Below are positions 9,609-64,000 of a stretch of DNA of 64,000 bases, piece by piece (position 1 is the stretch's first letter; each line of letters begins with the position of its first letter). The notes under the pieces are model-generated. The model was not told the origin of the DNA and did not search any database. It saw only the letters and a program-made list of their open reading frames with translations. A program made the position numbers and the translations under genes. Source of the DNA: Guillardia theta CCMP2712 (lineage: Eukaryota; Protista; Cryptophyta); contig NW_005434605.1 of NCBI RefSeq assembly GCF_000315625.1, positions 362,407 through 426,406 on the forward strand. The letters run 5' to 3'.

Positions 9609-10194
9609 TTAAGCTCCTCCAAGGCTTTCTTCCGTCAGTCTTCTCACCCTCTTATTGTATGCTTTTCTGTCCTGGAGAAACAGCTCCGCAGCTTCTGGGT
9701 TTGCTGGGCTTCCACAATTCGGATCCGTCAAGAGCGACTGAATAGAGGTTAATACAGAGCTGACTGTGTATGAAGGACTCCATTTGTTCTGAATGATGTC
9801 CAGGCACAAAGTTCCATCTTGATAGACTGCAAAAATCGAATTAGTTTCAAGCCCAGGCCAGGAGACAAGGACATGCAGAACAAACAACCTACCGTTAGGG
9901 TGAAAAACTTTTGTTGTAAAGCGAACTTTCGGGGGCTTATCTGGATACTGATCGCAGAAGGTCATCCGCAAGCTGAATATTCCCCCTTCCCAAGGCGTAT
10001 CTGCTGGCCCAAAGATTGTCGCTGTCCAAACAAAAATATTTTCTTCACTAAGGGGTGCCGCACTTGCTCCCTACAAAGCATACATCACAAAATCGCAGAG
10101 GTTTATGGTGACATGCTCGACTCACCTCTGGCGCATCTTTTTGCATTTCACGAAGATCACTCATTAAACGCAAGGTTGCGGCATTCTGCGACAT
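9609..10194 (-). CDS. UBC2: Ubiquitin-conjugating enzyme E2, RAD6/UBC2 type, 3 exons
   Basis: Spliced MSQNAATLRLMSDLREMQKDAPE|GASAAP..WTATIFGPADTPWEGGIF..YPDKPPKVRF..FHPN|VYQDGTLCLDIIQNKWSP..SIQSLL.DPN..SPANPEAA. The catalytic Cys is present. Confidence 0.9.
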
Positions 10195-15771: not shown

Positions 15772-21994
<6,223 letters not shown>

Positions 21995-27199: not shown

Positions 27200-29827
27200 T
27201 TAAAAGATCAGATTGCTCAGCCCTTCCATGTCGATCACCCGGTCCATGAGAAAGACGCCAATCTGTTTCGCAAACACCTTCATCCCTCCGTCAGATTTCC
27301 AACACGTTTCAACGACATCCAAACCTTGAGAACTATTTCGTCCTCCTCGCTGAAACAAGGGGTCTTGTTGAGAGCCTGCCAATGCTTGTATCAACTTCCC
27401 CCCCCCCCCCCCTCTCTGAGGTCTTGCGCTTACAACAGACCTCAAGCACGGCGATGGTGGTGGCGTCTTCCTCGGAGATGACAGGGACACAGCAGATGTT
27501 GGTGCAAACTTGGGACGGGAAGACTCGGTCGAAGGTGGGGCTGAAGAAGGGGTGCGCGAAGGCGTCGTTGCTTCGCACGCACTGAGTAGTCTCGGCCACA
27601 TGCCCTGTGATGCCCTCCCCGACAAAATGCTCTATGCTCGGCGGGGCTTCCCTTGCCTGCTCCATGGAGGCCGTCCTCGACATGCCCGACTCTCTTCCTG
27701 CAGAGACGAGGGTCACGAGCGTGCTCTTGGCCTTGGACGAGTCAGCGGGGGCCTCAGGGTTCTCATCCGGTTGCTTGATAACAAGCAGTCGCAAGCTCTC
27801 CACCTGCATGGAGCGCTGGAAGTCTTTGATCATGCCGGTGATGGAGGTGGAGCTGTTCCTCCGCTGAACCGACTTGGTGTGACGGATCGTTCGACTCCTC
27901 CTCGTCACTGACGTGGAGGCCAAGAGCTGCTCGGATCGATCCATGGTGGAGATGACGTCTTCGTCCGCGCGGGTCCAGGGCACGCTGTGTTTGCTGACCT
28001 GGAACACGCAGCTCACCTCCCCGTACATGTTCTTGAGCGGCACAGTGCAGATCCCCCTAGCAGGCAAGTCGGTGGTGCCACGGAGGTCGCGGGTGGCAGA
28101 GTACTTGGACTCCTTCCCCACGTCGTTAGTTGTGTTCATCATGGCCGTCTGGGCGGCAAGAGAGATGAGGCCGATCCCGTCGTTGGGTACCCGCTGCTCC
28201 AGCCCCAGGGTGATGCTCTCGTCGTCGAAGAGGGTGTGGAGGAGGCGGAACTCGTTGGCAACCTTGTCGAGGTAGAAGATGCCGCATTGATCCACTGAAA
28301 TGACGTTGACCGTCATGTCGTTGAGCATCTTGAGGACAGAGACAAAGTCGGAGGAGTTGCTGACGATCTTGGTGAACCTCAGGAACCTCTGCAGGAGCTG
28401 CTGTGCTCGCCATGACGCCGAGAATGCTCTGCACTGCTCGAATTCCTTCCCGCAAACTCTTGCAAACTCCTCGCAAAGTATCTGCATGATGCAAGAGCGA
28501 TCAGATTCGGCGTTGGATGCACAAGTGACTCGGTTTACCTGTAGCTCCTTATTGAAGAAGTTGAGGATTCTGTCGCCTTCCTGCAACTTCTTCTCCGTCA
28601 TGTGGTCGAAGAGCTGCAGGCAGCCCAGCAAGCTTCCGTCGGCATCAAGGATGGGACTGCAGACGAAGGGGGTGGTTTCCTGCCCCATAATCACGTCTGT
28701 CGTCTTGTTGAAGTCAGCTGCAAGGTCGTTCCCCATCTTATAGTTCAGCGTCTTTCCCTGCTTCAACACTTTGCCAACGATCCCGTCGATGGGCAACGGG
28801 CGATTGTTCACACCGATATCCACGTACCCGTCCTGTTTTGACTTGGATAGCGCAGCCATGACCACCAGGTGATCTCCTTCCAAGAAGAGTATCCGCCCTG
28901 ACCTCGCCGCACACAGATCCATCGCGATCTCGAGCATTCGGCTCGTCAGGAGCGGAAGATCCATGATGCTTCCTGGAATCTGCGCAATAAGAATGTCACC
29001 GACCCACCAGGCATGAGCAACAAGTGCATGGCCAAGGATGGACAGCGGGAGCAGGAGTGGGAGCAGGATAAAGTCTGGAATCTCCATACCTCCAGCATTG
29101 AGCTCATGCAGGTCATCACTTTGTTGAGGCAGGAGATCTGGTTGTATAACTCGACCAGTGAAGAGTTCCTCGCACTCTGTTGAAACTGACTGTACAGCAT
29201 GTTCATCGCAAGGATGAAGTCGTCAGCCTCCATCTGCCTGCTCAATGCTCTTTCGAACAAGATCCACATCGGGGAAACTCTGGTTTCCTCGGCAGCTGCA
29301 GGGCTCGGGGACTTCGTCTGGCATTCCCGGAAACGGAAGTACAACTGCTGCCAGATGGGGATGTCGTCATAGTTGTCCGTCTTGAACATCTTGTGGTGTT
29401 TGCTTGTGTACTGGCCATCGAAGTCAGAGCTGTTGCTGTTCCTCCCGCTCATCTTCATCCACGTGGACAGCTCCTGTTGCTTCTGTTTGCGTAAGTCCAG
29501 TTTTTGCCTCAGCAGGTCTGACTCAGCCTCGATGAGAGAGATCTTGTTGCGCAGCTTCTGAATCAGGTTCTCCTGCTCCCTGATCTTCGCCCAGGCTCGA
29601 GCGAGAGACTTGGAGGACGACTTCTTGAGGTCCTCGATCTCTTGCGCCTGGTGCTGCAGCACAGTGTCCTTGGCCACAAGGATGGAGCCCTGAAGAGCTT
29701 CAAAGGCTGGGAAGGGGTATCGCCTCCTGCTCTCGCTCCCTCCTCCCTCATACTGATCTCTTGGGTTGCGTGAGGGTCTCCAGGGGCTGGCCGATGACAC
29801 TGTGCGCCGCCTCTGATGGCTGCTCAT
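27200..29827 (-). CDS. Coiled-coil + tandem GAF-domain protein (PDE-type GAFs, no catalytic domain)
   Basis: Three GAF-like units: GIVGKV..FVCSPI..LLGCLQL; GLISLAA..ICTVPL..VFQV..EDV; GEGITGHVA..DAFAHPFF..NICCVPV..VLE|ALNKTPCFSEEDE. The stop at 27200 follows directly. An intron lies at 29089-28980. Confidence 0.8.
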
Positions 29828-30072
29828 GCTCCTCGACTGCCAGCCGCTTCCCTCCTCCTCGAGCAACCCCCGCCCTGCTGCTGGCTGCTGTTGCTCATTA
29901 GTCCGACAAGGTTCGACTCGCTTCTCCTGAAGGCCATGGCGCTCCGTGCCCTCCTCCTCCGCTGCTCCTCCTCGCAGTCCTCTACAACCTTCACCGCCGC
30001 CATCCCGTACGGCACTCCGAGGCTCCGGGCAATGAGCAAACAAACCGTAGCACGGCAGGTCAAGTCATTTAC

Positions 30073-33356: not shown

Positions 33357-34969
33357 CTATGATTTGCTAGTTAACTTCTGTGATCCTTTGGCTTTGTATC
33401 TTTTTCTCGCTCGCATGCACAACATTGAACGGCAAGGGGCCAAACTCTGATGAGCTCTGAAGACTCCATGAGAGTTTATTAGAGTGACATGGCTGGCAGT
33501 GATGGGGGGGCGCAGCAGCTGCTCCTCTACCCGAGACACTTGCAGCTTCCTTGAACATACTCGTCGATCGAACATGTGGGAGGGATGGCAGGAGACCTGC
33601 GGCGTGTCAGGAGGAGGGAGGAGGAAGGAAGAGGCTCTCACGTCTTGCCAGCGAGGTTGGGATCGTGTCCTGCTGGCGCGGCTCCTGCGATCTTGTCGAC
33701 GAGCAGACCGCCGCATGTAACTCCGCACATGTTGATGCCTAGGAGGCCGTGATAGACGTCCTCTCCTGCTGCTTGTTAGGACTTGGTCGGAGATCTCTCT
33801 CTCACCGATCACTCGACCGGCTCGCGCGTTGGTGCCAAGAAGGATTTGCGCTTGTTGGTTGACTATAGAGGTTGGCCATGTAAGTGAGGAGGAGAACAAT
33901 TTCGTTCCACCTCGTTGCAACAAGAATCCTGTAGTGTCTGACGTGTCAGCAACGGGAGGGCAACGAGCAGCAGCTGACCTGCGCTAGCGGGGACAAAAAT
34001 GTCGATGAAATGGTTGGCGCTGAGAGAAGAGAATGAGGGAAAGAGGTAGAGGGATGAGAGGAGAGGAGATGAGACGATGAGAGGACTTCGAAGAGGAATG
34101 AAAGGGGTTGGGAAGAGAGGAGAAGGAGGTAGAGGAAGATGAGTAGACCTGACGTTGACGTCCAGCAGAAACGACAATTTGAGATTTTCCGCATCCCATG
34201 TGGCAAGGGAAGTGTACTGAGAGGGGTCAGGGGGGGGGGAATGGAGCAGGAGGATTTCTACCGCGTTGTTCATGAGGGAGAAGGAGCTCGAGTTGCAGCT
34301 TATGTTGTAGATGTCAAGACACTGAAGAATAGCCGTGAGGACATCATCACAACCAGTATCCTCATCGTCATCAGAATGATCGAGTTTGCAAATACCGTGG
34401 CTGGCTCCAAACTTTCACAGATGTGCTGATACCCGACGACGTTGGTGTCGCAGAACTTCTGCAGCAGCAGCGCGTGAGTGAAGGAGGAGAGGCAGGACCC
34501 GTCACCATCGTCCGCTGGAAGCCGTTGAGGTAGAGGAAGACTTCTTCTCCCGCCCGCAGCTCCACGTTGAGGCTCAGCGACAGCAGCAGCATCATCGGGG
34601 CGCTCTCGAGGCTCCATGCTGGCTTGAAGGTGAAACTGGACGCGCACACGTCAGCTTCTTCCTTGTCTCCCTGTTATCCCAATGCTCCTCCCTCCTCCCT
34701 CCCCTCCACCAGCTCCTTCAGCTCCTCTTACCCACTCGTTTCTCCCATCTATCTTATCGTGCCCCTCATCAACATCACCGGCTGTCTTGGCCAAAGTGGC
34801 CGATGAGCGGGAAGAGCGTGAGGGGAGAGGAGTCAACGAGCGCGTTTATGGCCTCGGATGTGATACGGAAATCATCTGAAAGAAAGTGACGATCAGTAGG
34901 GTGAGCAGGAGGAGGAGGACAAGCGTCCGCCAGGTGCAACAGGTCCACAAAGAGCGACAGGCGCACAAG

Positions 34970-35035
<66 letters not shown>

Positions 35036-37597
35036 TGAGGCAGGGGGTCTCTTACGTCCTTGCTGAATGCCGGTAGGGGGCAGCTGGAGGACGTCTGAGC
35101 AGTTGACGAGGAGGAGGACGAGAGACTTCTTGCTGACTTGGACGAGAGCGCGCAGGTTCAGCCAGACGCCACTGGAAGCGTTCGGACTGTAGGAGGAGAG
35201 GCTGACGTTGAACACTTGCTGCCTTCCAACTCGTCCCAGAGAGATTCTCCGAGCAAAAAGACCGTCCAGCACCTCCCCAGCTTGCGAGATGTCGCTGACG
35301 CCGAACTTCTCCTGGAGATAGGAATAGGCGTCCGCGCCAGCAGCTGAAGAGGAGGTGATCGAGGAGGCATTCAGCAGGCCGAAGCCAGGCAGGAAGAGCT
35401 TGATCGTCTCTCCCGGCAGGATGACGTCGCTGAGCGTTAGGGCCAGCAGCAGGTTCGACCTCCAAGTGCCCGCGAGAGGGACGTCAAATCCCAGCAGGCT
35501 CAGCTCGAACGAGCCGAGCCCAGCAGACCACCCACCTGTCGGGAGGATCTTGCCATTGCGAGCGGAGGTTGCGAAGGTCATGTTAGGATCCTTGGCGGGT
35601 ATCCCGTCAGCCGGCAGGAGGACGTTCTTGACGCAGACCACCAGCTCCTCCCCGGCTCCCACCTGCTCGCCGAAGTGGAGGAGGAGCGTCGAGCCGTCTC
35701 CCTGCCAGGTGGGGAAGTAGCGAGAGGAGGAGGAGCAGTTGTTGGAGGCGAGCTGGTCGGGGAGGATGAGCTTGTCGAGCGCGAACTCTATAGTCTCTCC
35801 CTGCTCGAAGCTCATGACACAGCTGACAAACAGCTGGAAGTCGCTCCGCGTGCCGGCGACCGCGTTGGAGATGTCCATCCTCACGCTGCAGTAGCCGACG
35901 GAGTCCACCAGCGTCACGGGCTGCCAGGAAGAGGAGGCGGAAGTTGGAGAAGTCGGAGCGACGACCTCGACGAGCGGGGTATGGAGGGAGCTGCTGACAC
36001 CGTCCTGGGGAATGAGCAGGGAGACGAGGGTAGGGGAGGAGAGAAGCACGGGCTCAAGTGCGGGGATGGTGGCAGTAGGGCGGAACAGGAGAAGGAGGAA
36101 GCCTTGAGCTGAGAGATCTCCGAGGAAGAGATCCCAGCCGTTGTCGAGGGGGAGGAAGCAACAGGTGACGTTGACGTCTGTCAGGAGCATGCTAGAGGGG
36201 AAGTAACAGCTGCTCGTCGCCTCCTCCGCTGAGAGCGCCTGGCAGTTCGCTCCCTCCTGCGAGCGGAAGCCGAAGGCATCGAGGCGGAGGATGACGGAGC
36301 TGTTGGGGGGGAGCGACTCGGTGTAAGTGAAGTTGAAGAAGACGCGGGAGGGCTGGCCTGGGAACCTGCGCTCCTCGAACGAGACCCGCGACAGCAACTT
36401 GCCGACCCCCTCCACGTGGGTGAAGAACTGCCCGCTGACCTGATGCTCCACTTCCAAGGTGAAGCCGATGGAGTTTGGATGGATCCCGGTCGAGGGGAGG
36501 AGGAGGTTGAGGTCTGAGGGCAAGGAGAGGGCAAGGAGGTCGCAGGCGCTGACGTCCCTCCTCGGGCTCAGGCAGAGAGCGGAGCTTGAGCAGTTCCAGC
36601 GAGCGAGGAGGACGTCACTAACCTCGTGCCAGCCGTCGGAGACGTTGCAGGAGGACGTCACAAGCTCTGTCACCTTCACCTCCACGAAGCTTCCCTGCTG
36701 CAGCCTCATGCCTGGATACAGCTCCATCCGCAGCGACGAGGCGGCGCCAGGCAGGAGGGGCGAGAAGGAGAGGGAAGAGCCAGGGAACAGTCCAGCCGCA
36801 TAGACGAGCTCAACCCTCGCGCGTCCTCCCTGGTCAAAGGGAGCTGGGATGGAGGTTGGGACGGCGGCTGACCTCACTTGGATCGAGATGCAGGGGGAGG
36901 AGCTGGGGATCGCCGCCCAGGGGAGCAGCAGGGGAACCAGGAAATCGAATCGCACAGGCACGTTGGCGCCAACGCTCTGCGTCATCTGCACCATGAGCGT
37001 GCTCTCCCCTTGGCACTTCGCGCTCGTCGTGTCTCGTCCTGCTGGACTTGCCGTGATGTTGTCTCTGCAGGTGACGAACCCGCAGTCGACGCTGAGCTGG
37101 GAGATATTGCGGTAGCTCAGCTCAGCTGTGGCGTAGCTGGACTTCTCCTCCCCATCCAACGAGAACGTCAGCTCGACCCCTCCAGCTCCGTCGCAACTCG
37201 TAGGGGAGAAGGGGAGCGTCAGGTTCACCCCGTCCCCCTGCTGGAGAGCAAAGCTCAAGGTCAGCTCGAGGCTGACTTGACGGGCCAGCTGGTAGAGGCT
37301 TGTGGCTCCTGCCTGGAACTCTCGGTCGAAGGACAAGACGGAGCGAGGCACCTGTCGCATGTTCAGGCTCTCCCCTCCTCCTCCCCTCCTCCTCCCCTCC
37401 CGTTGCTCTCCTCCTCGCCACTCACCTCGAGCTCGGTCTGGATAGGAACATCGTACTGTTTCCCATCAGCAAAGACGAGGCGCATCCTGATGCCTGAGTT
37501 TCCTGCCTGGACCCCCGAGGAAGGATACCTAATGAAAGAGCAGAGAAGAGAAGATCAGGAGGGAGCAAAGAGAGATAGGTAGTATGGGGGAGGGAGC

Positions 37598-43148: not shown

Positions 43149-44072
43149 ATGTCGACATGGAACGAGTTCACAGATGAGGCCATCAAGGTTTGTGTTCAGG
43201 CATGCAAACACAGAAAAAGGACGCGGTCTACTTCAGTGCGTTCCTCTTCAACTTCCGCCAAACGACCGAAGACGATGCCTGAGAAGGATGAATGCTCTCC
43301 GGTTGCCAGGAGTTTGGAGTATGCAGAATCCCCTTACTTCAACTCGGCGTTTCCGTTGCCAGAGCCGCCTTCCAACTACGTCTTGGAAGAAGACGAAGCT
43401 CTCGTCAGCGAAGCCTCCAGACGGATTGTTGAGTTCAACCGTTTGCTCCGCTCCTTAGAGGAAGGCCCTGTCTATGCAGGAGGACTAAGCCGTTATTTCA
43501 TCTCGGAGCTTCTTCGCCGAATCAGAGCAAGCGAGAGCGATTCCGCTCCTGCGGCTTCTGCATTTGCCATCCACACGTTGCCGACCACAGAAGCTACCGG
43601 TAGTGAGACATCGATTGCGTGTGTGATATGCCAAGAGAACTTGAGTGGCACCCTCAAGCACATGCCCTGCTCGCATGGTTTCCATCAAGATTGCCTGGAA
43701 AAGTGGTTGCAACAGCACAACAGCTGCCCGACTTGTCGTTGTGAAATCGAGTCGTGCTGTCCACGATACAACACGTTTAACAGAAACAAGATCCGTAGTG
43801 TAGTTCGTGCAGAGGCGATGTACGATGAGAACTATCTCACGGAGACTCGTCCTCAGGATGTGATGCTTTCAGTCTGCAACAACGCTAGTGCACAGGAGCC
43901 TTCCGTTCTTCTTTCAAACGAGCAAGAGACTCACAATGGCGAGGACGAAGCTTCAGAAGAACAAGTCATTGCACGATACCGCCAGTCTCTTGTTTCTGTC
44001 AAGCCTGTGATGATACAGTCGCGTGATGCTGACTTCTTGCATCTCCACAGAGATGACGAATTCTTTTTCTGA
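43149..44072 (+). CDS. RING-H2 E3 ubiquitin ligase, single exon
   Basis: CVICQE..MPCSHGFHQDCLEKWLQQHNSCPTCR (C3H2C3 pattern). Confidence 0.9.
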   Translation: MSTWNEFTDEAIKVCVQACKHRKRTRSTSVRSSSTSAKRPKTMPEKDECSPVARSLEYAESPYFNSAFPLPEPPSNYVLEEDEALVSEASRRIVEFNRLLRSLEEGPVYAGGLSRYFISELLRRIRASESDSAPAASAFAIHTLPTTEATGSETSIACVICQENLSGTLKHMPCSHGFHQDCLEKWLQQHNSCPTCRCEIESCCPRYNTFNRNKIRSVVRAEAMYDENYLTETRPQDVMLSVCNNASAQEPSVLLSNEQETHNGEDEASEEQVIARYRQSLVSVKPVMIQSRDADFLHLHRDDEFFF

Positions 44073-49000: not shown

Positions 49001-51283
49001 CACTCGCTCTACGACGTGCAGAAGATGATCGACGCGGTCAAGGCGAGGGTGGCGAAGATGCCGGAAGATGGGTGAGGGGAGAAGAGGGGAGCAGAGGAGG
49101 GCAGGCAGGCAGTAGGGGGGAGGTGAGGGAGACAGGAGGAGAGGTGACCTGAATCGACAGGACGCTGCTACAATCCCTGGCTCGTCTGTCAGTCAGTGCG
49201 GGCAAGTACAACGAGGCTCTGGACATCTTCCTCAGACTGCGATGTTCAGAGGTCCACTCCTTCCTCGCATCCTCAACCCTCAGTCTTCTCTCTTCCTCTC
49301 CTGCTCCCCCTCCTCCCACGCTCACGTCGAATACGAGCAGGAGGCGTTCGACCTCATCGAGAAGTTCGACCTCTACTCGTTCGTCAAGGGGAAAGTTGCC
49401 TCCCTCGCCAAGTTCGACGAGGATCGGGCGGTCAAGATGCTCGTCGGGTGTCCCGATCAGATTTCTCCCTCCTACGTGGTGGAGCAGGTGAAGCTGAAGG
49501 CCTACGGAGAGGCGGAGCTGACGAGCAGCAGCTGCGGGACAAGAGGAGCACCCTCCACGCCTACCTCGACGCTCTCTTCGACAAGGACCCTCGCGCTGGC
49601 GCAAACTTCCATGAGCTGCAGGTTGATGCTCCTCGCTCTTCCCTTCCTCCCGCCTCCTTGTGTTGCGCTTCCTCGGCCCTCCCCATCTCCTTCCTCCTCA
49701 TACGCTCTCGATGCTCCCTGACCTCCCGCACCGCGTTGAGTCTCCTCCTCGTCCTGAGCCTCGGGTCTACAGATCGAGCTGTACGCAGACTTCGACAAGT
49801 CGAAGCTCCTCTCCTTCTTGTCTCAGAGCAACAACTATCGGTCTCCTCCTCTCCTCCTCTTCCTCTCTCACCCGGTCCCAACAGCTTGGAGAACGCCCTC
49901 AAGCTCTGTGAGAACAGAAAGCTCTACCCGGAGATGGTCTTCGTGCTCGGTCGGATGGGCAACACTCAACAGGTGAACATCTCTCCTCTCCTCTCGCTCC
50001 GTTTTCTTGCTTCAAGCTGCTCTCCTCTTATCAGCTTTGTCCCTCCCCTCTTTCACCTGCGTGTTGCTGGCTCCCTCTCCTTTACTCTCTCCTCCTCTCT
50101 CGTCGTTTCAGCTTCAGCTTGCAGGCTTTGCGGCTGCTGCTCGAGCAGATGCAGGACGTTCCCAAGGCGATCGAATTTTGCCAAGCGCAGGTGAAGGAGG
50201 AGGGGAAGGAAGGGAGAGGAAGTCACGGGTGGTGAACCGAGGGAATGTCGAAGTTGGATTGGGATGGAAAAAAAGGGAAAACCGAGGGAAGGGNNNNNNN
50301 NNNNNNNNNNNNNNNNNNNNNNNNNNNNNNNNNNNNNNNNNNNNNNNNNNNNNNNNNNNNNNNNNNNNNNNNNNNNNNNNNNNNNNNNNNNNNNNNNNNN
50401 NNNNNNNNNNNNNNNNNNNNNNNNNNNNNNNNNNNNNNNNNNNNNNNNNNNNNNNNNNNNNNNNNNNNNNCGCCGCCGCCGCCGCCGACCACCACCACCG
50501 CCGCAGCAGCAGCAGCAGCAGACGACGACGACGACCTACAACGACCACCACCCCCCTCCTCCTCCTCCTCCTCCTCCTCCTCCTCCTCCTCCTCCTCCTC
50601 CTCCTCCTCCTCCTCCTCCTCCTCCTCCTCCTCCTCCTCCTCCTCCTCCTCCTCCTCCTCCTCCTCCTCCTCCTCCTACAGATGTCATTGCGTGAGGGCT
50701 GCGAGCGTATCTTACGGTCAGATGTTGTTCTCTTGGAGAGGCGGCTCAACAAGGTGAAGTTTGAGGAGGAGGAGGAGGAGGAGGAAAGTATCATATCGTG
50801 CTTTCTAACTTGCTTGCAGGCTCAGAGGAGGGCGACGAGGATCGACGGGAGGGTGAGTATGAGCAGGAGGGAGGAGCGGGTTACAGACTTGGTTGCCTGA
50901 CATCGCCCTCTCCCTCTGCTGCTGCAGACGCGATGCTGTTTGACAGGAGCGTCGCTGACGGGAGATGCGAGCGGGAGGTGCTCGCTGACGTCTCGTCGCT
51001 TGACCTCCTCAGCTCCATGTACGCAGGATCTTGTGGCCATACCCGGACCTGGTCGTCTTTCATGGCGGGAGAGTCTTCCAGGCACGGCTGCTCGCGCGTC
51101 GCTTCTGCTGATGCAGCCGCAGGAGGCAGCGCTGATCGATCACTGCTCGGACCCTCTCAACATGCAGGCGCTCATGGGCGCCGGTCCTGCACCCTCGCAG
51201 CCTGTGACGTGCTGACCCTCTCGCAGGCAAGAGCGGGAAGCTACAGGAGGGGGCGAGTGGAGGAGGTCAAGCGCCAGGGGTGA
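46091..51283 (+). CDS. VPS41: HOPS subunit VPS41 (acidic N-terminus, WD40, clathrin-repeat), many exons, spans a gap
   Basis: EEPRLKYQRLG, KFLALGT, ASCSDDGTV, LLIGWADFVKI, DYFISGLAP, SSDALSMHGFE, DIVVARQRDFDDHVTWLL and YPEMVFVLGRMGN. The 3' end is approximate. Confidence 0.92.
50294..50470. other. Assembly gap (177 N)
   Basis: Run of N. Confidence 0.99.
50555..50677. repeat. (CCT)n trinucleotide repeat, intronic, just before an acceptor
   Basis: Tandem array ending ..ctacag. Confidence 0.92.
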
Positions 51284-52025: not shown

Positions 52026-55000
52026 ATGGAGGATGATTCTCTCAACGGAGTCGAAGAGGAGGAGGACCAAAACAATGACAGCATGCAGCCCCCTGCTCCC
52101 CCGCACGACGAGACCGACACGGTTATCGCGGGCTCCTTGCTGTGGTTCCGCGGTCGCGTGCAGTCGATGCTGCGTCTTCGATCGGACAAGGTGGACAACC
52201 TCTTCGACAGGGCTCACTCCAAGCGCGTCTTCCTCGACTTCATCCGCGAGCCAGCGAGGCGACGGCTCATGGTATGGCCGGACGTACAAGATGAGCTGAG
52301 CGTGGGGTACGAGCTGCCGCCAGGCAACCAGCGCAAGTCCATCTTCTTCCTGAAGCAGCGGAGCTTCCGGGTAGAGGAGGACGGGAGCCTGTCGGGGATC
52401 ATGATCGGCGACCTGCCTGCGGACGTACTGGAGCATCTTTCAGTGATCTCGCACGAGGTGCTCTATCCCATCCTGGTGGCTGGGCGAGGGAAGGAGTCGG
52501 AGTCACTGAGCAAGGAGATTCTCGACGTCTTCCACAAGTTCCTCTCCCAAGTCTTCCTCACCGTCGGGCAGACGCAGGGGAAGACGCTGCTGCCGCTCCC
52601 CCCGCGAGACCCGAACCAGAAGGACGTGTCGGAGCAGAGAATCGTCAAGGATAAAGAGAGGGTCCACGTGCTGGAAAGCTGTGTGGTTACCTGGACGCAG
52701 CAGATCAGAAATGTGCTCAGGCACGAGCCTCCGACGTTCATCATCCCCGGGGAGAGCACCACAGGCTCCTCCTCCGAGTTCGCCTACTGGAGGAACCGAG
52801 CCAAGGACCTGACGTCGATCAACGAGCAGCTGTGCAGCAGCAAGGTGCAGAAGGTGCTGCAGGTGCTGGAGGTCACCAAGAGCACGTACGAGAAGCCCTT
52901 CCAGAAGCTCGTCAAGGAGGTGACGCTCGCCAAGCAGGAGGCCTGCAACATCGACCTCCACCTGAAGCCGCTGGAGAAGCTGCTCGCCGAGTATCGAGAC
53001 ACTCCCTTCACAGACATCGGTCGCATGTTCGCGCCCGTCATGCTCGCGCTCTCGCTCATCTACGCGCGTCCGACTCAGTTCGCCAACCCCGTGAGGCTGC
53101 AGAGCATCCTGGAGAAGATCTTCAACGACGTGATCTGCGCGGCCCTCAAGTTCGTCAATGGATCTCAAGTCTTCTCGTCCGATCCTGACGAGATGGAGAG
53201 TCGGCTCAACGAGACCATCGCCATCTTCGGGCAGCTGAGGCGAACCTACCTCGAGTACAAGGCGCGATCAGAGCAGTCCAAGGTGCCATGGGCCCTGCAG
53301 GACGAGCTTGTGTTCAACCTACCCGACCAGTTCGTGGAGCGATGCTACGACATGATCGACCTCGTGCAGATGACCTCGCGGTTCTCAACCCTCAAGTCTG
53401 TTCAAGTTGGCGGTGAGATGCGCATCTCGCGATCCATCGACCAGATCACCGCAGAGTTCCACGAGGCGCTCAAGCACGTGCAGGACACGGGGTACGACCT
53501 GCTCGACATCTCGGCGAGGAAATACGACGACGATTTCTTCGAGTTCAGGCGGATCATCCGAGACTGCGAGAGGCGGTTGGGCTCGCTGATCGCAGAGAGG
53601 ATGGAGGAGATTCACACGCTCTCCGCCTCCTTCAGCTTCCTTGCCTGCTTCGAGGGCATGCTCGACCGCAAGATCATCCAGGACAGCCTGGGCGAGCGAG
53701 AGCTGAGCTTGCTGCGAGCCTTGCAGGAGGAGGTGGAAAACGTGCAGGAGGCGTTCACTGGGGGCAAGGAGAACCTCCCTTTCTACTACAACATGCCCCC
53801 TCACGCCAGCCGCGTCCTCTGGAGTCGCTCCCTCAGCGATCGGCTACGAGGGCCCATGGAGTGTGCAAAACGGATGATAAGGAACGCGATGACGTCAGAG
53901 GCAGGGCAGGAGACTCTGAGGAGGTACGATGAGCTACTGGAGGAGCTCAAGGGCTTCGAGGAGGAGGAGATCAGGGCGTGGCTGGAGGGCATCGACTACA
54001 AGTTTGGGGAGAAGATGAAGCAGTCGCTGCTGATCCGCGAGATCGGATCGAAGCGACTCAGAGTGAACTTCGACGCAGGTGTCTGGGCCCTGCTGCGGGA
54101 GACAAAGTACCTCAGCCTGTGCGAGGTTGAGATCCCCGAGATGATCCGCGGGCTCTTTCAACGAGCTGAAATCTACCAGCAGCACGCGCGGAACCTGGAG
54201 ATCATCGTGAACGACTACAACGTGCTGCTGTCCTCCATGGCAGAGGTAGAGGCTCCCCTCATGTCGCAGAAGATGGAGCTGGTGGACGAGGCGCTGGAGG
54301 AAGGGATCGAGCACCTCAACTGGAGGAACCACTCCATCTCCTCCTTCCTCAAGAAGACCACCTCCTACATCACAGATGCGGCGGCGCTGCTGAAGCTGCT
54401 GCAGAAGAACGTGAACAAGGTCTGCAAGCTGCTGCAGGGCTGGTCCAACAGCAGCCTGCACTCGGTGAGGAAGAAGACTCTGGGAGCCGAGGAGTACCTC
54501 CAGTTCTACCAGCATGCGCTGGAGAGCCGTTACAACGGATTCCGAGAGGAGAGCCGGCAGATCCATGCGCTCATCGCTGAGATCCACCTGGCACTAGAGT
54601 TGAGCAGGGGAGACCCAGGCTGGAAGCACTACGTGACGCACGTGAACCAAGTGATCGTGGAGACGCTGAGAGCTGCAGTGCTCGACTCGCTCGACAGCAT
54701 CGTCAACATGCTCGACCCCTCCAAGAGGAAGGACTCCCTCCCTCCCATCGTCGAGATCCGGCTGGAGCTCATCGCCCCTGACGTGTTCTTCAACCCGGAC
54801 ATCGGATCCAACATCTCAGGCACAGGACTCGAGGACTTGCTCGAGCGCTGGATCGCCTCCTCTCTCGACGTCACTCACGTCCTGCAGAGGATCGACGGCA
54901 GTGACAGCACCTACTACAACGACGTGGTCGTCAGCTCCGAGGTGCAAGGAAGGATGGCGGAGATTCGGAGCCTGGCGGCGGGAGTGTTCAGGTCGCTCAA

Positions 55001-58000
55001 GGATCTCAAGTCTCGCTTCGAGGAGTTCTCCTCCTTCTGGCTCCAGGAGCCTCTCGACCAGTTCGCCGTCTTCCTCAACGACATCAGGAACTCGAACCTC
55101 AGCGCCGAGGAGGAGCTCACCAACTTCGAGGATCAGATCCGCGTGCTCAAGGAGACCGAGGGCAGGATCAAGCTGCTGAGCAACAGAGAGACGCACGTGT
55201 GGGTAAGCGTCGACGCGAAGCCGATGAAGCAGGCGCTCTTCACGGTGCTGTCCAAGTGGACCTTCACCTATACCAACCACCTGGTGCAGAAGCTGCTGGT
55301 CGAGACCGACGAGATGCAGGGCTTCCTCGCTCGCGCCTCCTCCAAGCTCCGCGCGTTTGCGGAGGAGGTGGACGAGTCGTCGCTGAAGGAGATCATGACG
55401 CTGATCAGCGACGTGAGGAGAATGTCGGCCAAGTTCGAGGACCTGCACAGCCCGTGGGTCTCCTCCATCTCCATCCTCAAGAGCTACAACGTCGAGGTGC
55501 CGCAGTGGGTGCACGAGCATGTCAGCTCGTCGGGAGCTCAGTGGTCGCAGCTGAAGAAGCTCATGTACCAGTGCCGTACGATGCTGGAAGACAACTGTCT
55601 CCGTGAGCAGGCGAGCGAAGCCTCCCCTTGTCCTGCTTGCTTCACCCTCTCCTCTCCTCCTTTCACCTCCTTCTCGCTGATCCGCTGCCTCAGGTCCGGC
55701 TCAAGGAGGTCAGCAGCAACTTTGCAGCGCGAGCAAGCTCCTACCGCTTGTGGTTCGAGTCTCATATGCCCTTCACTAACTCCTTCGACAGCGACTTCGC
55801 ATACAGCATGATCGACGCGCAGCATCGAGGACTCGCTGCTTCCCCCAGACCCGCACGAGATCGCACGGGGAGCGAGGGGGCGGTGACCTTCAGCCTGCCG
55901 TCGAGCTCGCACGAGAGAAGCTCGGTGCCGTCACTGGCGCAGATGCTGGAGGAGCTGAAAGAGCTCAACGTGGAGGAGGAGATCTTCGACCTCCCGCTGA
56001 CCTTCCATGAGGGTCTGCTCGAGTGCAGGGAGGAGGTTGGGATTCTCAAGCACCTCTGGGACCTCGCCTCGCTCCTCCACTTCGCCTTTGCGCACTGGCA
56101 TGAGATCGCGTGGGTCGGGGTAAACCTGGAGGAGGTGGCGGAGGAGATGAGGGGGGTGTGGCGAGTGATCCGAGAGGTTCCCAAAGAGGTGGGCATGAGC
56201 GAGTACAAGCAGGGCGTGTTCCAGCAGTGGCCCCTCTACTCCTACATGAACGAGCGCATGGCAAACGCGTTGCAGGCGGTGGAGCTGATGAAGCAGCTGC
56301 AGGCGTCCAACATCCGGCAGAGGCACTGGAAGCAGCTCATCCGGGTGACCGGGTCGAACCTCATCTCGGAGATAGACATCAACCTGCGCGAGATGTTCTC
56401 CTTGAACCTCGTCCAGCACGCCCGCGAGGTCGAGGAGCTCGTGCGAGGAGCGGAGAAGGAGAGCGAGATCGAAGCTCAGCTCGCGAAGTTGGAGAAGGAG
56501 TGGTCCCAGCTGGAGCTGGCCTTCCAACGCGAGGAAGGAAAAGTCTTCCTCCTCCCCCCCGACAGCGTGCTCTCCCTCCTGCACGAGTCTCTCATCGAGG
56601 TTCAGCTCCTCAGCTTCAATGTCTACGTGGTCAGGAACGCCTCCTTCTCCGACCAGGTCGCCACCCTCCAGCACCAGCTCGGCACCACAGAGTCGCTTCT
56701 CAACTTGTGGCTGCACGCGCAGCACAGACACTCGACGCTCGAGGCTCTCTTCGCCACCCGCGCGGCCGCCAAGGGATGCGCGGACAAGGCTGCGGACTTC
56801 GAGGCGATCGACCAGTCATGGCAGACGATGATGGCGCAGGCAGCCGCCATGCCCAACGTGGTGGAGACATGTACGAGCGAGGAGCGCTTCAAGCAGATCA
56901 AAGCCATTCACAGCAAGCTCGAGGAGATCGAAGCGGCGATGAGAGGCTTCCTGGAGCAGGCGCGGGATCAGTTTCCTCGCCTCCACCTGCTCTCAGACGA
57001 GCAGCTACTGATGCTGATGAGCTTCGAGGGTCAGCCTAAGGAGACGATGGAGTACCTTCGCTTCCTCTTCCCCGGGGTGCATGAGCTGGGCATCGACTTT
57101 CAGGACGGGGGAGAGGCTCAGGTCTTCACGTCGGTGAGGGACAAGAAGGGCGGGAGAGTCAGCCTCACTCCTGTGCGGTGCGATGGGACCATCCTGGATT
57201 GGATCAAGGAGCTTGACAGTAAGACGACCGAGTCGATGCGACGCCAACTGTCGGAACTCATGCGGGCGACGCTCGAGTCGAGCGAGTCGCTGGCGAGCGG
57301 AGCTCATGTCCAGCTGGCGCTGGTCTGCCTCTCCATCGATAAGAGCGCGAAGATCGACGGGCTGCTGCAGGAGATGCTCACGGCAGCTGGAGAGCAGGTG
57401 AGGAGCTTCAAAGACGCTCAGAGGGCAGAGGTGGACGCCTGGACATCCCAGCTGAGGGACAACCAAGTGCACGAGCTGGAGCGCGACCGGCTCTCGATGC
57501 TCCTCCTCGCCGCCCTCGACTGGATGCACCTGATGGAGCTGCTCGAGACGATCCCGTCCTGCAACCCCAGCAGCTTCGAGTGGAAGATGCAAGTCCGGTA
57601 CCGGATGGTGGAGGACTCGTGCGAGGTGCTGGTGGGCGATCGAAGCCTGGGGTATGGATACAGCTTCATCGGACACAACCTGAGCTGTACGCTGAAAACC
57701 CCTGCCTCTCGTCCCGCCTTCTACTCTCTCATCCGCAACTTCAGCGAAGGAGCAGCAAGCCTTGTGACAGACGTCAGGCAGGAGAAGCTGCAGACGGTGA
57801 CGTCCATCGCTCACTCTCTAGGCGTCTTCCTCCTCCTTCACCGAGGAGGAGGGCTGACGACCGACAGAGACTTTTTGCTCAAGGAGCTCATGGGGGTCGC
57901 GAGTGCAGGCGGCTGGTACGTCATCACCAACCTTTGGGCTCTGCCCCCCAACGTGCTCGCCATCGTCCAGCAGGCTGCCAGGAGCTTCATCTTCGCCGTC

Positions 58001-61000
58001 CGAGCCATGAGATCGACGAGCATTGAACCTCAGCTGATCCCCAGCTTGAGCCTGTTCGGGAAGACGATGAGCTCGAGCTCCTACTTCTCTCTCGTTGCTA
58101 CTGCCAGCGAATCTTCCGCACAGCAGCAGAAGCCCTCCTGGTCCTCAGCCCCCTCCTCACCCTTGCAGCAGCAGCGGCGGCAAGAAATCTGCCTGCCGTC
58201 GTTCCGACAGATTTTCCGCCCACTGAACATGCTTCTTCCCGACCTGCTTACCGTCGCCTGTATCTGCCTGATGGAGCAAGGATTCCCCGACGCTGCGAGC
58301 TTGGGGAAGCGAGTTCACGACTTCTTCCTCCTCGCCCGCAAGTCGCTGAGCGAGTGTCGGCACTACCAGTGGAACGGGGAGCTGCTGCGAAAGATCATCA
58401 GGGTATCCGGGCAGAAGAGGAGAGAGATACTGTCAGAGACGTTGCAGACGACGCGCGAGGGAGAGGCGGAGAAGGAGAAGCAAGACTCCTTGCAGATTCT
58501 CGGACAGACAGCGCTCAAGGTCCTCCAGCCGCAGCTGCTCGAGCAGGATAAGTACACCTTTGCGCTGCTTGTCGACCTGCACCTGCTCAGCCCTGAGAAG
58601 GCTGACGAAGTGAAGGCGAAGGAGGAGGAGACGGGGGAGCGCGAGGGAGAGGTCTCAGGTATCAGCCCCCCCTCCACCATGGCGGCGAGTTTCAAGGGAA
58701 CTCTCGACCCCTCTGACGCCTCGCAGCCCGCGAGCGCGTCGGTTGAGCTGAACCTGCAGGCAGCGGCGGGGGAGCTGCAGCTGGAGCTGAGCGAGGACTT
58801 CTACAGGCTGTGCGTGCACTTCACCACCTTGTCAGCTCACTTCCCAGCTGTTATCCTCCTCGGCCCTCCTGGCTGCGGCAAGTCCTCCATCGTCCGCACA
58901 TGCGCAGTGCACAAGAGAATGTCCAAGGTGCCGGTGTCGCTGAGGACGGTGACCTGCAACATGATGGAGGTGCGCGAGCTCTACGGCTTCTTCCCCGACA
59001 AGTCCATGCGATGGCAGGACGGCATTCTCTCCTCTGTCCTCCGTGACTTGAGCGCTGCTGCCCTCGCCGACCCCAACTCGCAGCAGTGGCTGCAACTGGA
59101 CGGAGAACTGCATCCGTCATGGAGCGAGCCCATGGGAGAGGCGCTGGAGGAGGAGGGGGAGGTGGTGTTGCCTTCGCATGAGAGGATCGTCAAGCCCCAG
59201 CAGGTCAAAATCCTCTTCGAGGGGACCAGCCTCAAGCATGCAGACCCCAACATGGCGGCGCGATGCGGCATCCTCTACGTGCCCCCGAGCGAGGATGGCT
59301 GGACCAACACGACGAGATGCTGGATGAGGGGCATCGACGACACGGAGATCTTGTCTCTCTTAGGAGACCTGCTGGGCGATGCGCATGACGACCTGCTCCC
59401 CAGCGCCATCAAGTTTCTCGCACGGGAGTGCACGTTTGCTTCTGCAGCACGAGAGGTAGACGGAGGCTCCGTCAACGCGCTTGCTCAGATGTTCTGCTCC
59501 ATCCTCAACGGAACAGACCTGATCAAGAAGACGGAGAGCGAAGCTGACAGCCATCGCGGCGGCGTGAAGGGCAACGTCTCCATGCTTGACGCGCTGCCAA
59601 CCAGGAGCCAAGAGGCTTCCTTCAACGAGAAGAGAGTCGCGTGGCTGGGGAACCTGCTGATCTACTCCATGCTCTGGAGCTTCGGCGGGCTGCTAAACAA
59701 GGACTCGAGGTTGAAGTTCAGCTCGTGGACGCGAGGAAAATTGATGGAAATGGAGGGGAACAAGGAGCGCTTGAAAACGCTGATCAGTTTGCCTCCTACC
59801 GGCAACTTGTACGACATGTACTATGACGTCGCCGACTCCACCTGGAAGGTCTGGAGCGACTCGCAGCGGGAGCATCACTACCTGACCGGAGGGAACGAGG
59901 AGACCAACTCCGAGCTCTTCCTCGTCGCCCTCCCGCAGACCATCGCCATCCAGAGCTGCCTCTCGCTGGTACACAAGGCGGGCCATCCCTTCATGCTGCA
60001 TGGATCCGTCGGCTCCGGCAAGTCTGCCATCCTCACCGACTTCTTGTCGTGCCTGGACCCGGAGCAGACGATCAGCGCGAAAGTTCCCGTCACGGGCAGC
60101 ACCCGGCCGCGAGACCTGCAGGCGGCCATGGCGGTGGTGCTGGAGCACAAGAGCGGGAGGCTGTTCGCTCCCAAGGGCACGAAGCGAGTCACCTTGTTCG
60201 TGGACGACCTGCACCTGGTGCGCAAGGACGCGAGCGGGATGAAGCGAACGCTGGAGCTGCTGCGGCACATCCTTGACAACGGCAACTGGTTCGACCTGAC
60301 CCTCTGCGCCGAGTGCATCCTTCAGAACTGCCTCTACGTCGCCGCCATGTCGCCATCGCTGACGTGGGTCGAGGATGGGAGACTGCGCCGTCACTTCGCC
60401 TGCCTGCACGTAGAGGAGCCAAGCAAGGAGGCGCTGCAGGCCATCTACAGAAACATCGCTCTCTCCATCTTCCGCGTGCATGACGCTGAGGTACAGCGGA
60501 TGGCAGAGCCGTTGGCGCACACGTCAGTGAAGCTCTTGATGGACTTGTCGTCTGTCTTCACGGCCTCCAACGATCGCCCTCACTATCTCTTTAACCAGCA
60601 TGACCTCGCCAAGATCTTCACCGCCCTTCAAGCTCGCTCAGACCTCTGCTCCTCCCCAGTCTCACTCGCGCAGGTCTGGGCGTTCGAGTGTCACTGCGTC
60701 TTCATCGGCAGGTTGACCAGCCACGACGATGTGAACATGAGCACGAGGATCATCTCCCGCGCCGTCGAGACCATCGACGAGCATCTGGGGCTGCGAGAAT
60801 CGCAGACGGAGACGTTGAAGAAGACTTCCTTCCTGTGCGTGCGAGAGCAGGGCAACGGCCTCACTGTGCTCCCCGTCCACGAGCAAGCCGATCTCCAGGC
60901 GAAGATCGTTAGCCATCTGAGCGACTCCTTCCCCTCCCTGGGGGTCCCCTGCTCCCGCACCCCCTCGCTCGTCGACTTTCAGAGCATGGCGGCTCTCTAC

Positions 61001-64000
61001 GCAGAGAGCATCGCCAGCATCTCAGTTGCTCTCGGACAGCCCGGGGGGCACGCGCTGCTGCTGGGGCCAAGGGGGAGCGGGAAGACGACCTTGAGCCACG
61101 TGACTGCCAGGCTGTGCGGCCTGACCCTCGTCGACCTCTCCTACGACCCTGACAAGGAGGAAGAAGCGAACCTGCGCAGCCGCCTATGCGACCTCTACTG
61201 GGACGCAGGAATCAACCGCGTGAGCATGGCGGTGCTCGTGAAGGTCAGAGGCAGGTCGTCGCACCGCATGCTGTCCTACGTGAGCGACATGCTCAACGCT
61301 GACGGGTACGCGCACATGATCTCCTTGTTTCCTGACTCGCGGCGGAACGAAATCTTCGCGTCCTTGAGAGGAGAAGTGCGTAAGCAAGGCCTGGTTGACA
61401 CCCCAGAGAACTGCTGGACTATGCTCAAGTCGATGGTCAACGCGAACCTGCACGTGATACTGAGGGTGTCGGTGAGCGAGAGCTCGTCGCTCCTCCAGGT
61501 CTTGTCCTCCTTCCCCGCCCTGGTCTCCCGGATGTCCGTCCACTGGGTCGGGAACTTCGTCTCGGACAACCTGCAGGCCTTCGCAAAGCACTACCTGAGG
61601 AGCGTGTGGGAGGGCGAGGAGGACGAGGAGCTGACGGTGCAGGCGGCCCGACACATGTCGCTCGTCCATCACGCGGCCAGCGAAGCAGCGCGGCACGACC
61701 ACGAGAGACACTCGCTAGCGCTGCATCCTGCCTTGTCTCCCTCCCTTCACAAGGATCGTTCGCAGCTCGCCTCCTCGCAGTCGGTCGCTCCCTTCACCTG
61801 GTACAACCTTGCCTTCGTTAGGATCTACCAGGAACGCAGTCGCTCTCTCCGTGACAAGTGCGACATGGCCGGCCGCGCCAAAGTGAAGCTTGAGAGTGCA
61901 CTGGCTCGGCTCAACGACCTGGAGACCATCATCGAGGACCAGAAGCAGGTGGTGGAGCAGAAAAAGATCGTCGCCAACCGCCTCCTCGCGCAAGTTGGTC
62001 AGGAAACGGCGCTGCTGGACGAGCAGCGAGCGGTGCTGGTGGAGGACGAGAAGAAGCAGGGAGCGCTGAGCGAGGTGCTGTCGGAGCTGCAGGCCAACCT
62101 CAAGGAGCGAGTCGATCTCGCGGCTCCGCTGCTGGAGAAGGCTGAGTCAGGACTGAACCGGCTGGACTTTTCCAACTTGTCGGAGCTGCGAAGCATCACC
62201 AGCCCTTCAGAGAGCTTGCTGGCTGTCTCCCGCTCCCTCGCCATCCTCCTGACGCAGCGAGGAAAGTCTCTGCCGGAGGTGGAGATGCTGGTGTGGAAGG
62301 AGGTCAAGAAGATGTTCTCGAAGGTCGACTCCTTCCTCAACCTCCTGACTCGCTTCAACGTGAAGGACGCCAACGCTGACGCAGTGCGGGTGGTGGAGGA
62401 GGAGTATCTGGTGCTTGCAGTGTTTGCCGAGGACGTGAAGGATCCCCCGGTGGTTTCAGGGCTCAAGACGTGGGTGACCAACATCATCGCCATGTTCCAC
62501 ATCTACGAGGAGATCAAGCCCAAGCAGCACGAGCTCAACATCCGCAGCAAGGAGTGGGAGCTGATGGCCGCCAAGGTCGCCGACCTCTCGACGCGCGTCA
62601 AGACGTTGGAGTCGCGGCTGACGGAGCTCATGGCCAACTTCCAAGACGCCACCGAAGAGAAGAACGCCGCAATCAAGACGCTCGAGGACCTGGCGGCAAG
62701 CTGTGAGATAGCTGGAAGACTCGCCAAGGCTGTGACGAGCAGCGACGTCAACCCGATCGAGGAGGCCAAGGAGAAGTACGACAGGCAGCTGCAGTGCCTG
62801 CTGGGGGACTCGCTTGTCGTCGCGGCGATGGTGGCGTATGCGGGAAGGCTGGACGTGATGGGACGGCGCTTCTTTCTTGAGGAGAGCGTGGAAGCAGATC
62901 TGAGAGCTCAGAAGCTCCCCCTCTCCGAGGGCTCTGAGCTCAAGCTGCAGGCCCTCGTGCGCACAGCGACGATCGCCAAGTGGCACGTGGAGGGGCTGCC
63001 AACGAGCCGCTTCCTTCTCGAGTCTGCCATCATTGCGCTCTACTCGCCTGCTTGGCCCCTCCTGCTCGATCCCGAGGGTGTTGGTCTCCGGTGGACCATC
63101 TCGCTCCATCGGGAGGAGAGCCAGAAGCGAGGAGGAGAGGCTGAGTGCGTGGTGAGGAAGGACGATGACGTGGAGCTGGTCAGGACGATGAGACTCTGCG
63201 TCAGCACTGGCAAGACTCTCGTGGTGCATGGGACGCTGAGGCGACTGAGCGGCGACTTGTGCTCCCTCCTGCATAGGAAGCTGTACATGCTCAAACGAGT
63301 TGCGGTCGTCGACCTCGCAGGCGAGCCTACGGTCGTGCACCCTGAGTTTCGGCTTGTCTTGGTAGCGGCGTGCGATCGAGATCGTTTTGAGGAGGAGCTG
63401 GAGTCGGCGACGACGCAGATCAAGTTCTCGAGCAGCTTCTCAGGCATCGTCCGAGAGAGGATCCTTGAGATGGTGATCCGGCTTGAAATCCTCGAGAGCT
63501 CTGCCAACTGGCTGGGCCTGCTGAGTCGTCGCCACAAGATGTTGCAGGTAGGACGTCATACCTGTGTGTGTGCAAGAGGCTGACGCGATGGCAGGAGAAG
63601 CAGGAGCTTGAGATCTCCATCCTCCGCATCCTGGGGGACAAGGAGGGTCAAGTGCTGTCAGACGAGCGTGCGAAAACCGTCGGAGATGACTTGGGTAAGA
63701 TGTTCCAAGTGAACTCACAGCTCCACGAGACGATCTCTGAGAACAGGCGAGAACCTTCCTCTTCAATTTCTCACCATCAACATGACGCTCCTCCCTCCCT
63801 CCAACCCTCCATTCGCCCCCTCCTTATGATCCTTATCCTCATCCTGTCGAATCAAACATAATGACCTGACTAGTCAGTTTGCAGGGCAATCAATGCTTTC
63901 AAGCATTCTTATCGCAAAGTTGCGATGGCAGGAAGTTTGCTCATCAAGACAGCGATGCAGCTTCAGTCGATGGATGCGACCTACGTCACTTCAGCTGAGT
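52026..64000 (+). CDS. Divergent axonemal-type dynein heavy chain (outer-arm-like tail), runs off the window
   Basis: DHC_N1 tail motifs (GKTLLPLPP, EFAYWRNR, MPPHASRVLWSRSL, LRVNFD) and linker (IRQRHWKQL, ARDQFPRL). P-loops at AAA2 GPPGCGKS, AAA3 GSVGSGKS and AAA4 GPRGSGKT. Stalk/MTBD and AAA5 WPLLLDPEG are present. Exons 52026-55610, 55694-63547 and 63595 onward. Confidence 0.93.

What the first reader, a model, noticed from the sequence alone, without database searches (positions are those of the whole stretch)
57650..58420. Dynein heavy chain with a catalytically dead AAA1: a probable pseudo-motor
Seen: in the AAA1 register, anchored by FEWKMQVRY/YGYSFIG upstream and FRPLNMLLPD/HYQW downstream, four catalytic elements are replaced. 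Walker A (canonically GPAGTGKTE) reads VTDVRQEKLQ. Walker B (WGCFDEFNR) reads WYVITNLWA. Sensor-I (ITMNPGYAGR) reads VATASESSAQ. Sensor-II (WGLRAIK) reads WNGELLRK. The AAA2, AAA3 and AAA4 P-loops, the AAA2 arginine finger (AARCG), the stalk/MTBD and the full tail are all retained in very long stop-free exons. Known: AAA1 is the principal ATPase site that drives the dynein power stroke. Inference: this is a maintained, non-motile dynein that may act as a scaffold, brake or tether. It is possibly analogous or orthologous to the degenerate animal DNHD1.
Basis: partly seen in the sequence, partly recalled or inferred. Interest (0 to 1): 0.85.

Follow-up and report, generated by a model that had tools for sequence, protein, structure and literature searches.

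The report
Motor-dead outer-arm dynein, intact stalk
This alga expresses a full-length flagellar dynein whose main ATP-burning site has been erased while its microtubule-gripping stalk stays unusually conserved, so it is most likely a non-motile structural or regulatory part, a kind of dynein so far characterised only in animals.

Summary
In a 99-sequence alignment AAA1 has lost all three P-loop glycines, the Walker A Thr, Walker B Asp-Glu, sensor-I Asn and sensor-II Arg (now Glu); only the Walker A Lys remains in place. The AAA fold is kept (pLDDT 86). Two spliced cDNA contigs carry this AAA1 unchanged, and a second strain shows pN/pS about 0.1, so it is not a pseudogene or assembly error. 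Tail and motor place it with outer-arm beta chains; nothing ties it to DNHD1 (untested) or gamma-derived DNAHX. A marine ortholog shares a GC-AG intron and also lacks Walker B and sensor I. Between the two, stalk identity (66%) exceeds AAA1 identity (32%), the reverse of all 630 canonical pairs, and stalk lengths are exactly canonical. Six further paralogs have degenerate AAA1 sites (2 beta-, 4 gamma-tailed). Non-motile dyneins are known in animals (DNAHX, DNHD1), and the scan noted other dead dyneins in this genome before. Verdict: new variant of a known kind; static axonemal link about 45%, DNAHX-like transport partner about 30%.

The parts
52026..55610 (+). Exon 1: N-terminal tail of outer-arm beta type (Pfam DHC_N1 about 52662-54347)
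   Evidence: Pfam E=1e-135; best PDB hit Chlamydomonas OAD-beta 606 bits against 195 for the next class; cDNA contig X1 is long enough to reach about 230 nt upstream of the ATG (computed from record coordinates)
55611..55693 (+). Intron 1, 83 nt, phase 0, GC-AG; same position and GC donor in the marine ortholog
   Evidence: Skipped in contigs of runs X1 and X3; ends placed; ortholog intron read from sequence
55694..63547 (+). Exon 2 (2618 codons): neck/linker, AAA1-AAA4, stalk, start of AAA5
   Evidence: Pfam DHC_N2, AAA_6, AAA_5, AAA_7, AAA_8, MT, AAA_9; 55694-61200 covered by spliced cDNA with 0 differences
57767..57793 (+). Erased AAA1 Walker A (TDVRQEKLQ for GPAGTGKTE); Lys kept at 57785
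57914..57940 (+). Erased AAA1 Walker B (Asp-Glu replaced by Thr-Asn)
58094..58213 (+). Erased sensor I (Asn to Ser) followed by a loop insertion also present in the ortholog
58361..58393 (+). AAA1 sensor II, Arg replaced by Glu at 58379
58862..59269 (+). AAA2: intact P-loop (58862-58885) and arginine finger (59261)
60002..60718 (+). AAA3: P-loop kept; Walker B is Asp-Asp as in axonemal chains; sensor-I Asn and sensor-II Arg lost
61064..61087 (+). AAA4 P-loop (GPRGSGKT)
61712..61786 (+). Segment holding a 17-18 residue insertion in AAA4S just before the helix that becomes CC1; shared with the ortholog
   Evidence: span is 50-51 aa against 33 aa in nearly all other chains aligned
61880..62800 (+). 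Stalk: CC1, microtubule-binding domain (62153-62476), CC2; canonical lengths; most conserved part of the motor
63548..63594 (+). Intron 2, 47 nt GT-AG (inferred)
   Evidence: sequence and continuity with the ortholog ORF; not covered by the read-laying run
63595..63746 (+). Exon 3 (AAA5, inferred)
   Evidence: 37% identity to ortholog
63885..64000 (+). Exon 4 start (inferred); the gene continues beyond the window through AAA5S, AAA6 and the C-sequence (L032)
   Evidence: 24% over 565 aa to a canonical beta chain, E=5e-18

Best explanation
A duplicate of the outer-arm beta heavy chain that has become a non-motile structural subunit. Shown: full length, transcribed, spliced, under purifying selection; AAA1 catalytic residues gone; AAA fold, beta-type tail and canonical-length stalk kept; AAA3 lacks the residues to take over. 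Follows from established dynein enzymology (PMC4879348, PMC2533788): without Walker B, sensor I, sensor II and a glycine P-loop, AAA1 cannot hydrolyse and very probably cannot bind ATP, so there is no linker power stroke and no ATP-driven release (about 90% that it is a functional non-motor). Inferred: its tail assembles with a gamma-type chain and intermediate/light chains at outer-arm sites, and its stalk and microtubule-binding domain act as an ATP-insensitive link or damper between doublets in part of the flagellar apparatus.
For: Motif loss; fold kept; cDNA with 0 differences through AAA1; 29 synonymous to 8 non-synonymous differences in a second strain, pN/pS 0.10, P=3e-11; ortholog also lacks Walker B and sensor I; identity window/ortholog CC1 75%, MTBD 63%, CC2 59% against AAA1L 33%; AAA1 minus stalk identity is -33 points here and at least +12.8 in all 630 canonical pairs; CC1 84 aa and CC2 72 aa as in 36 of 36 canonical chains; stalk model pLDDT 95, rmsd 1.9 A to a solved stalk; an empty AAA1 site corresponds to the open-ring, straight-linker state (PMC4879348); beta-type tail.
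Against: No localisation, protein or binding data. The ortholog keeps a P-loop and sensor-II Arg, which would favour an ATP-trapped weak-binding state instead. The loop before MTBD helix H6 is about 3 residues shorter and altered, so affinity is unknown. The AAA4S insertion sits where DNAHX has its locking insert (by helix nomenclature, not by alignment). AlphaFold models lean on alignments of canonical chains and do not report conformational state.
Confidence: 0.45

Rival explanations
1. DNAHX-like phi template: a motor locked in the pre-powerstroke, weak-binding state that pairs stalk-to-stalk with an active heavy chain to silence and ship it during flagellar assembly.
For: Model proposed for DNAHX (PMC11785096). 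The ortholog's pattern (P-loop and sensor II kept; Walker B, sensor I and arginine finger lost) is what an ATP trap looks like. CC1 identity of 75% includes exposed positions, suggesting a partner on the stalk. Shared AAA4S insertion.
Against: The window protein has lost the ATP-binding residues needed to close the ring. DNAHX lets its stalk and MTBD decay with insertions, whereas here they are the best-conserved part. The AAA4S insert is short and poorly conserved in sequence.
Confidence: 0.3
2. Non-axonemal structural role: a static microtubule tether in the cell body (flagellar roots, basal body, furrow/gullet).
For: A rigor-like head with a conserved stalk would serve any tether role; seven such chains suggest varied jobs.
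Against: The tail is a well-conserved outer-arm beta tail (50-65% to the ortholog), which normally means outer-arm assembly and docking (PMC5100056).
Confidence: 0.12
3. Still a slow motor, driven from AAA3 or AAA4 instead of AAA1.
For: P-loops of AAA2-4 are kept, AAA3 is 50% identical between orthologs, and both carry an Arg at the AAA4 arginine-finger column that cytoplasmic dynein-1 has and most outer-arm chains lack.
Against: AAA3 has no catalytic Glu, no sensor-I Asn and no sensor-II Arg; AAA1 is strictly required for motility in all tested dyneins (PMC4879348).
Confidence: 0.05
4. Decaying pseudogene, assembly error or mis-registered alignment.
For: Long branches; only 5 reads in one raw RNA run.
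Against: About 11.4 kb of coding exons without stops, spliced cDNA identical through AAA1, pN/pS 0.10, indels seen in the second strain are in frame (6 and 3 nt), intact ortholog, structure-consistent register.
Confidence: 0.02

Closest known systems
Outer-arm dynein beta heavy chain (Chlamydomonas ODA4/DHC14; DNAH9/11/17; Kollmar class 4-beta)
   Same: Tail type, domain order, stalk lengths, tree position of tail and motor.
   Different: AAA1 catalytic set erased; AAA3 sensors lost; insertions after sensor I, in AAA4S and in AAA5; conservation shifted from AAA1 to the stalk.
DNAHX / dynein-X of sea urchin and other aquatic animals (PMC11785096)
   Same: Outer-arm-derived, full length, degenerate AAA1, proposed non-motile; an insertion in AAA4S before the stalk helix.
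   Different: DNAHX comes from the DNAH5/8 lineage, keeps Walker B and traps ATP, has a disrupted folded-back stalk and is reported absent from protists. This chain is beta-derived, has lost Walker B and the P-loop, and keeps a canonical stalk.
DNHD1 (Kollmar class 11)
   Same: Lacks AAA1 Walker B residues and is proposed non-motile (PMC11785096).
   Different: Metazoan; no sequence link found here, and it was not available for my trees.
Kollmar 2016 class 13 and the Guillardia/Thecamonas orphan dyneins (PMC5100056)
   Same: Class 13 has beta-type tails and a longer AAA5; Guillardia orphans were reported to group basal to classes 12 and 13. This gene has a beta tail and an AAA5 insertion, so it is probably one of those catalogued orphans.
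   Different: That paper states that ATP sites were not analysed; I could not identify which orphan this is or test class-13 membership.

Membership tests
Dynein heavy chain family | Tail, linker, six AAA modules, stalk/MTBD, C-sequence in order | tested here: met
   AAA5S-AAA6 only weakly similar (24%)
Active dynein motor | Complete AAA1 set: GxxxxGK[T/S], Walker B DE, sensor I N, sensor II R, AAA2 arginine finger | tested here: not met
   7 of 9 scored residues lost; Lys and arginine finger kept
Active dynein motor | Microtubule-stimulated ATPase and gliding | not testable with these tools
   needs biochemistry
Outer-arm beta lineage (class 4-beta) | Beta-type tail with DHC_N1 and no kelch propeller | tested here: met
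   tail tree clade support 96
Outer-arm beta lineage (class 4-beta) | Motor (AAA3 to CC2, AAA1 left out) groups with outer-arm alpha/beta chains | tested here: met
   support 100 under LG+G, 99 under the mixture model; quick trees, long branch
Outer-arm beta lineage (class 4-beta) | Located in outer dynein arms | not testable with these tools
   no imaging or proteomics
DNAHX | Derived from the DNAH5/8 (gamma-type) lineage | tested here: not met
   tail scores 606 bits to beta and 164 to gamma
DNAHX | Insertions disrupting CC1, CC2 and MTBD | tested here: not met
   canonical CC1 and CC2 lengths; straight stalk model
DNAHX | Folded pre-sensor-II insert in AAA4S | tested here: inconclusive
   17-18 aa insert at the matching position; the one DNAHX-like sequence held lacks this region
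DNAHX | AAA1 degenerate but with Walker B kept and ATP trapped | tested here: not met
   Walker B and P-loop lost
DNHD1 (class 11) | Phylogenetic grouping with DNHD1 | not tested
   no DNHD1 sequence was returned by any search
Kollmar class 13 | Beta-type tail and lengthened AAA5 | tested here: met
   necessary, not sufficient
Kollmar class 13 | Monophyly with metazoan class-13 motors | not tested
   no class-13 sequence available

The most novel reading that the evidence does not exclude
This alga builds complete motor-dead outer arms: its three beta-tailed and four gamma-tailed AAA1-degenerate chains pair into heterodimers that replace active outer arms on chosen doublets or on one of the two unequal flagella, acting as passive ATP-insensitive cross-links that shape the waveform.
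Probability: 0.2. Interest if true: 0.85.

Novelty: new variant of a known kind. Interest (0 to 1): 0.58.

Why it matters
Non-motile dynein heavy chains were described only recently and only in animals, and the DNAHX paper reports that family absent from protists. This is an independent, beta-derived case in a culturable alga with a more complete erasure of AAA1 and, unlike DNAHX, a stalk that has become the most conserved part of the motor. With its ortholog it gives a natural series (hydrolysis residues lost first, binding residues later). It makes two open questions testable: what orphan dyneins do, and whether axonemes use passive dynein-shaped cross-links. It is not a new category, and the gene was probably catalogued as an orphan in 2016 without its ATP sites being examined.

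Tried and rejected
Mis-registration: rejected by four alignments and the model. Cryptic intron, alternative exon or RNA editing restoring AAA1: none in two cDNA contigs (contigs drop rare variants). Further orthologs: word-index searches with AAA1 found none; two JGI metagenome scans found nothing; only one ortholog lineage was found (P0064, P0180; loci L039-L044, L047, L048) plus a tail-only fragment (P0179, 51%). Naming the ortholog's organism failed: no synteny, neighbours uninformative. P0006, a mildly degenerate beta-type chain of unknown source, joined the pair at 87 under LG+G but not under the mixture model, so no claim is made. An apparent 7-residue CC1 deletion was an alignment artefact. 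The careful bootstrap trees did not finish.
Full report
Setting. The window is G000:C69:362407-426406 of an 87.1 Mb, 669-contig eukaryotic genome. That size fits Guillardia theta from my own recollection, and earlier scan notes name that species; I did not confirm it independently. The finding lies in a dynein heavy chain gene on the + strand. Exon 1 (52026-55610) encodes the tail and exon 2 (55694-63547) the linker to the start of AAA5. The gene runs past the window end through AAA5S, AAA6 and the C-sequence. Searches were made exon by exon; the joined model was left out.

Observation. In a 99-sequence alignment the three P-loop glycines become T, R and E, the Thr becomes L, Walker B Asp-Glu becomes Thr-Asn, sensor-I Asn becomes Ser and sensor-II Arg becomes Glu; each of these columns is 87-99% conserved in the other 97 sequences. 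The Walker A Lys stays in register and the AAA2 arginine finger is kept. An AlphaFold2 model of AAA1-AAA2 has pLDDT 86 with each motif on the expected element and matches dynein motor domains (TM up to 0.80). The domain is folded but disarmed.

It is a live gene. Contigs from two runs skip the 83-nt intron and then match the genome with no differences through AAA1 (13.1 and 10.6 kb). The intron is GC-AG, phase 0. This excludes an assembly error and gives no sign of editing or a rescuing exon. A metagenomic strain shows 29 synonymous and 8 non-synonymous coding differences among those listed (pN/pS 0.10, P=3e-11; 71 more were not shown), and its listed indels are in frame. One raw RNA run gave only 5 reads, so expression level is not established.

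Origin. The tail scores 606 bits against Chlamydomonas beta and 195 against the next class. Tail and motor trees, the latter without AAA1, both place it among outer-arm alpha/beta chains (support 96, 100 and 99). These are quick trees with a long stem, so the position inside that clade is unresolved. It is not of the gamma-type lineage that gave DNAHX. DNHD1 and class 13 were not available for testing.

Ortholog. A profile-free search of cluster representatives gave one fragment at 42% identity over the linker region, which led to full loci from Tara marine metagenomes. This ortholog shares the intron position and GC donor. Its AAA1 keeps a P-loop and the sensor-II Arg but lacks Walker B, sensor I and the AAA2 arginine finger. 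The simplest reading is that hydrolysis was lost in the common ancestor and binding residues were lost later in the window's lineage. Strains of the ortholog's organism give pN/pS about 0.37. Its taxon is unknown.

Where the constraint went. Identity between the two is 33% in AAA1L, 33% in AAA2L, 50% in AAA3, 75% in CC1, 63% in the MTBD and 59% in CC2. In all 630 pairs of 36 canonical chains AAA1L is more conserved than the stalk, by at least 12.8 points; here the difference is -33 (the pairs are not independent). CC1 (84 aa) and CC2 (72 aa) have exactly canonical lengths, and the stalk models as a straight coiled coil with a normal MTBD. AAA3 cannot obviously take over: it has no catalytic Glu, no sensor-I Asn and no sensor-II Arg, although both proteins carry an Arg at the AAA4 finger column. 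Both also have a 17-18 residue insert in AAA4S before the stalk helix, which by helix nomenclature (my knowledge) is where DNAHX has its locking insert.

Not alone. The genome holds six more heavy chains with weak AAA1 scores. All lack Walker B Asp-Glu or part of it and sensor I, with variable damage to Walker A and sensor II. By tail, two are beta-type (C69 at 99.7 kb; C21, weakly) and four gamma-type (C93, C1, two on C11). The trees do not join them into one clade with the window's gene.

Mechanism. AAA1 is the only site strictly required for motility, its residues have defined roles, and the ring closes only when ATP binds there (PMC4879348; PMC2533788). A power stroke is therefore very unlikely (about 90% non-motile and functional). 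With a conserved outer-arm tail and a stalk under strong selection, my best reading is a static outer-arm-type subunit whose stalk links or damps adjacent doublets (0.45). The main rival is a DNAHX-like locked partner that silences and ships active chains (0.30); the ortholog's ATP-trap pattern and the AAA4S insert favour it. A cell-body tether (0.12), a motor driven from AAA3/4 (0.05) and a pseudogene (0.02) follow. Location, partners and binding state are all inferred.

Relation to what is known. It works like DNAHX and DNHD1, the proposed non-motile animal dyneins (PMC11785096), but fails the DNAHX membership tests on lineage, stalk and Walker B. Kollmar (PMC5100056) listed Guillardia orphan dyneins near classes 12 and 13 and said the ATP sites were not analysed; this gene is probably among them. 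The scan had already noted other dead dyneins in this genome and this same stretch; those notes are leads, not evidence. What is added here is the beta origin, the ortholog with complementary losses, the inverted conservation of stalk over AAA1, and the count of three beta- and four gamma-tailed chains.

Verdict. Real, maintained and very probably non-motile; a new variant of a recently recognised kind. Interest 0.58. The most novel reading not excluded, wholly dead outer-arm heterodimers used as passive cross-links, has probability about 0.2.

Noticed in passing
G000 C93 (L037), C1 (L038), C11 (L034, L035), C21 (L036), C69:99739-100677 (L033): Six more heavy chains with degenerate AAA1: two beta-tailed, four gamma-tailed; two are on C11 about 60 kb apart and two beta-tailed ones on C69.
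   Followed up: partly
window 61505-61546; L042 equivalent: Arg at the AAA4 arginine-finger column as in cytoplasmic dynein-1, absent from most outer-arm chains, although AAA3 lacks its catalytic residues.
   Followed up: partly
window 55611-55693 and 63747-63884: GC-AG introns: the first is shown spliced and conserved as GC-AG in the ortholog; the second is inferred from sequence only.
   Followed up: partly
P0006 (residues about 1915-2100): A 4745-aa beta-type chain of unknown source with a mildly degenerate AAA1 whose Walker A resembles the ortholog's; relationship unresolved.
   Followed up: partly
P0113, P0033, P0160, P0124, P0131, P0137, P0074, P0086: Several database heavy chains, including a beetle protein (P0113), have 3-6 of 9 AAA1 catalytic residues changed, so degenerate AAA1 sites may be widespread and under-reported.
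   Followed up: no
run X10, window 55300-61200: A 1-2% divergent strain of this organism is present in a run labelled freshwater metagenome.
   Followed up: no
window 7308-9059, 9612-10070(-), 14218-15078, 22770-23375, 27333-30043(-), 43149-44072: Ordinary neighbours: pescadillo, ubiquitin-conjugating E2, cysteine dioxygenase-like, EAF, GAF-domain and RING-finger proteins.
   Followed up: no
window 34775-37360(-): 861-aa ORF with no Pfam match.
   Followed up: no
window 19753-19852 and 50294-50470: Assembly gaps (runs of N), outside the dynein gene.
   Followed up: no
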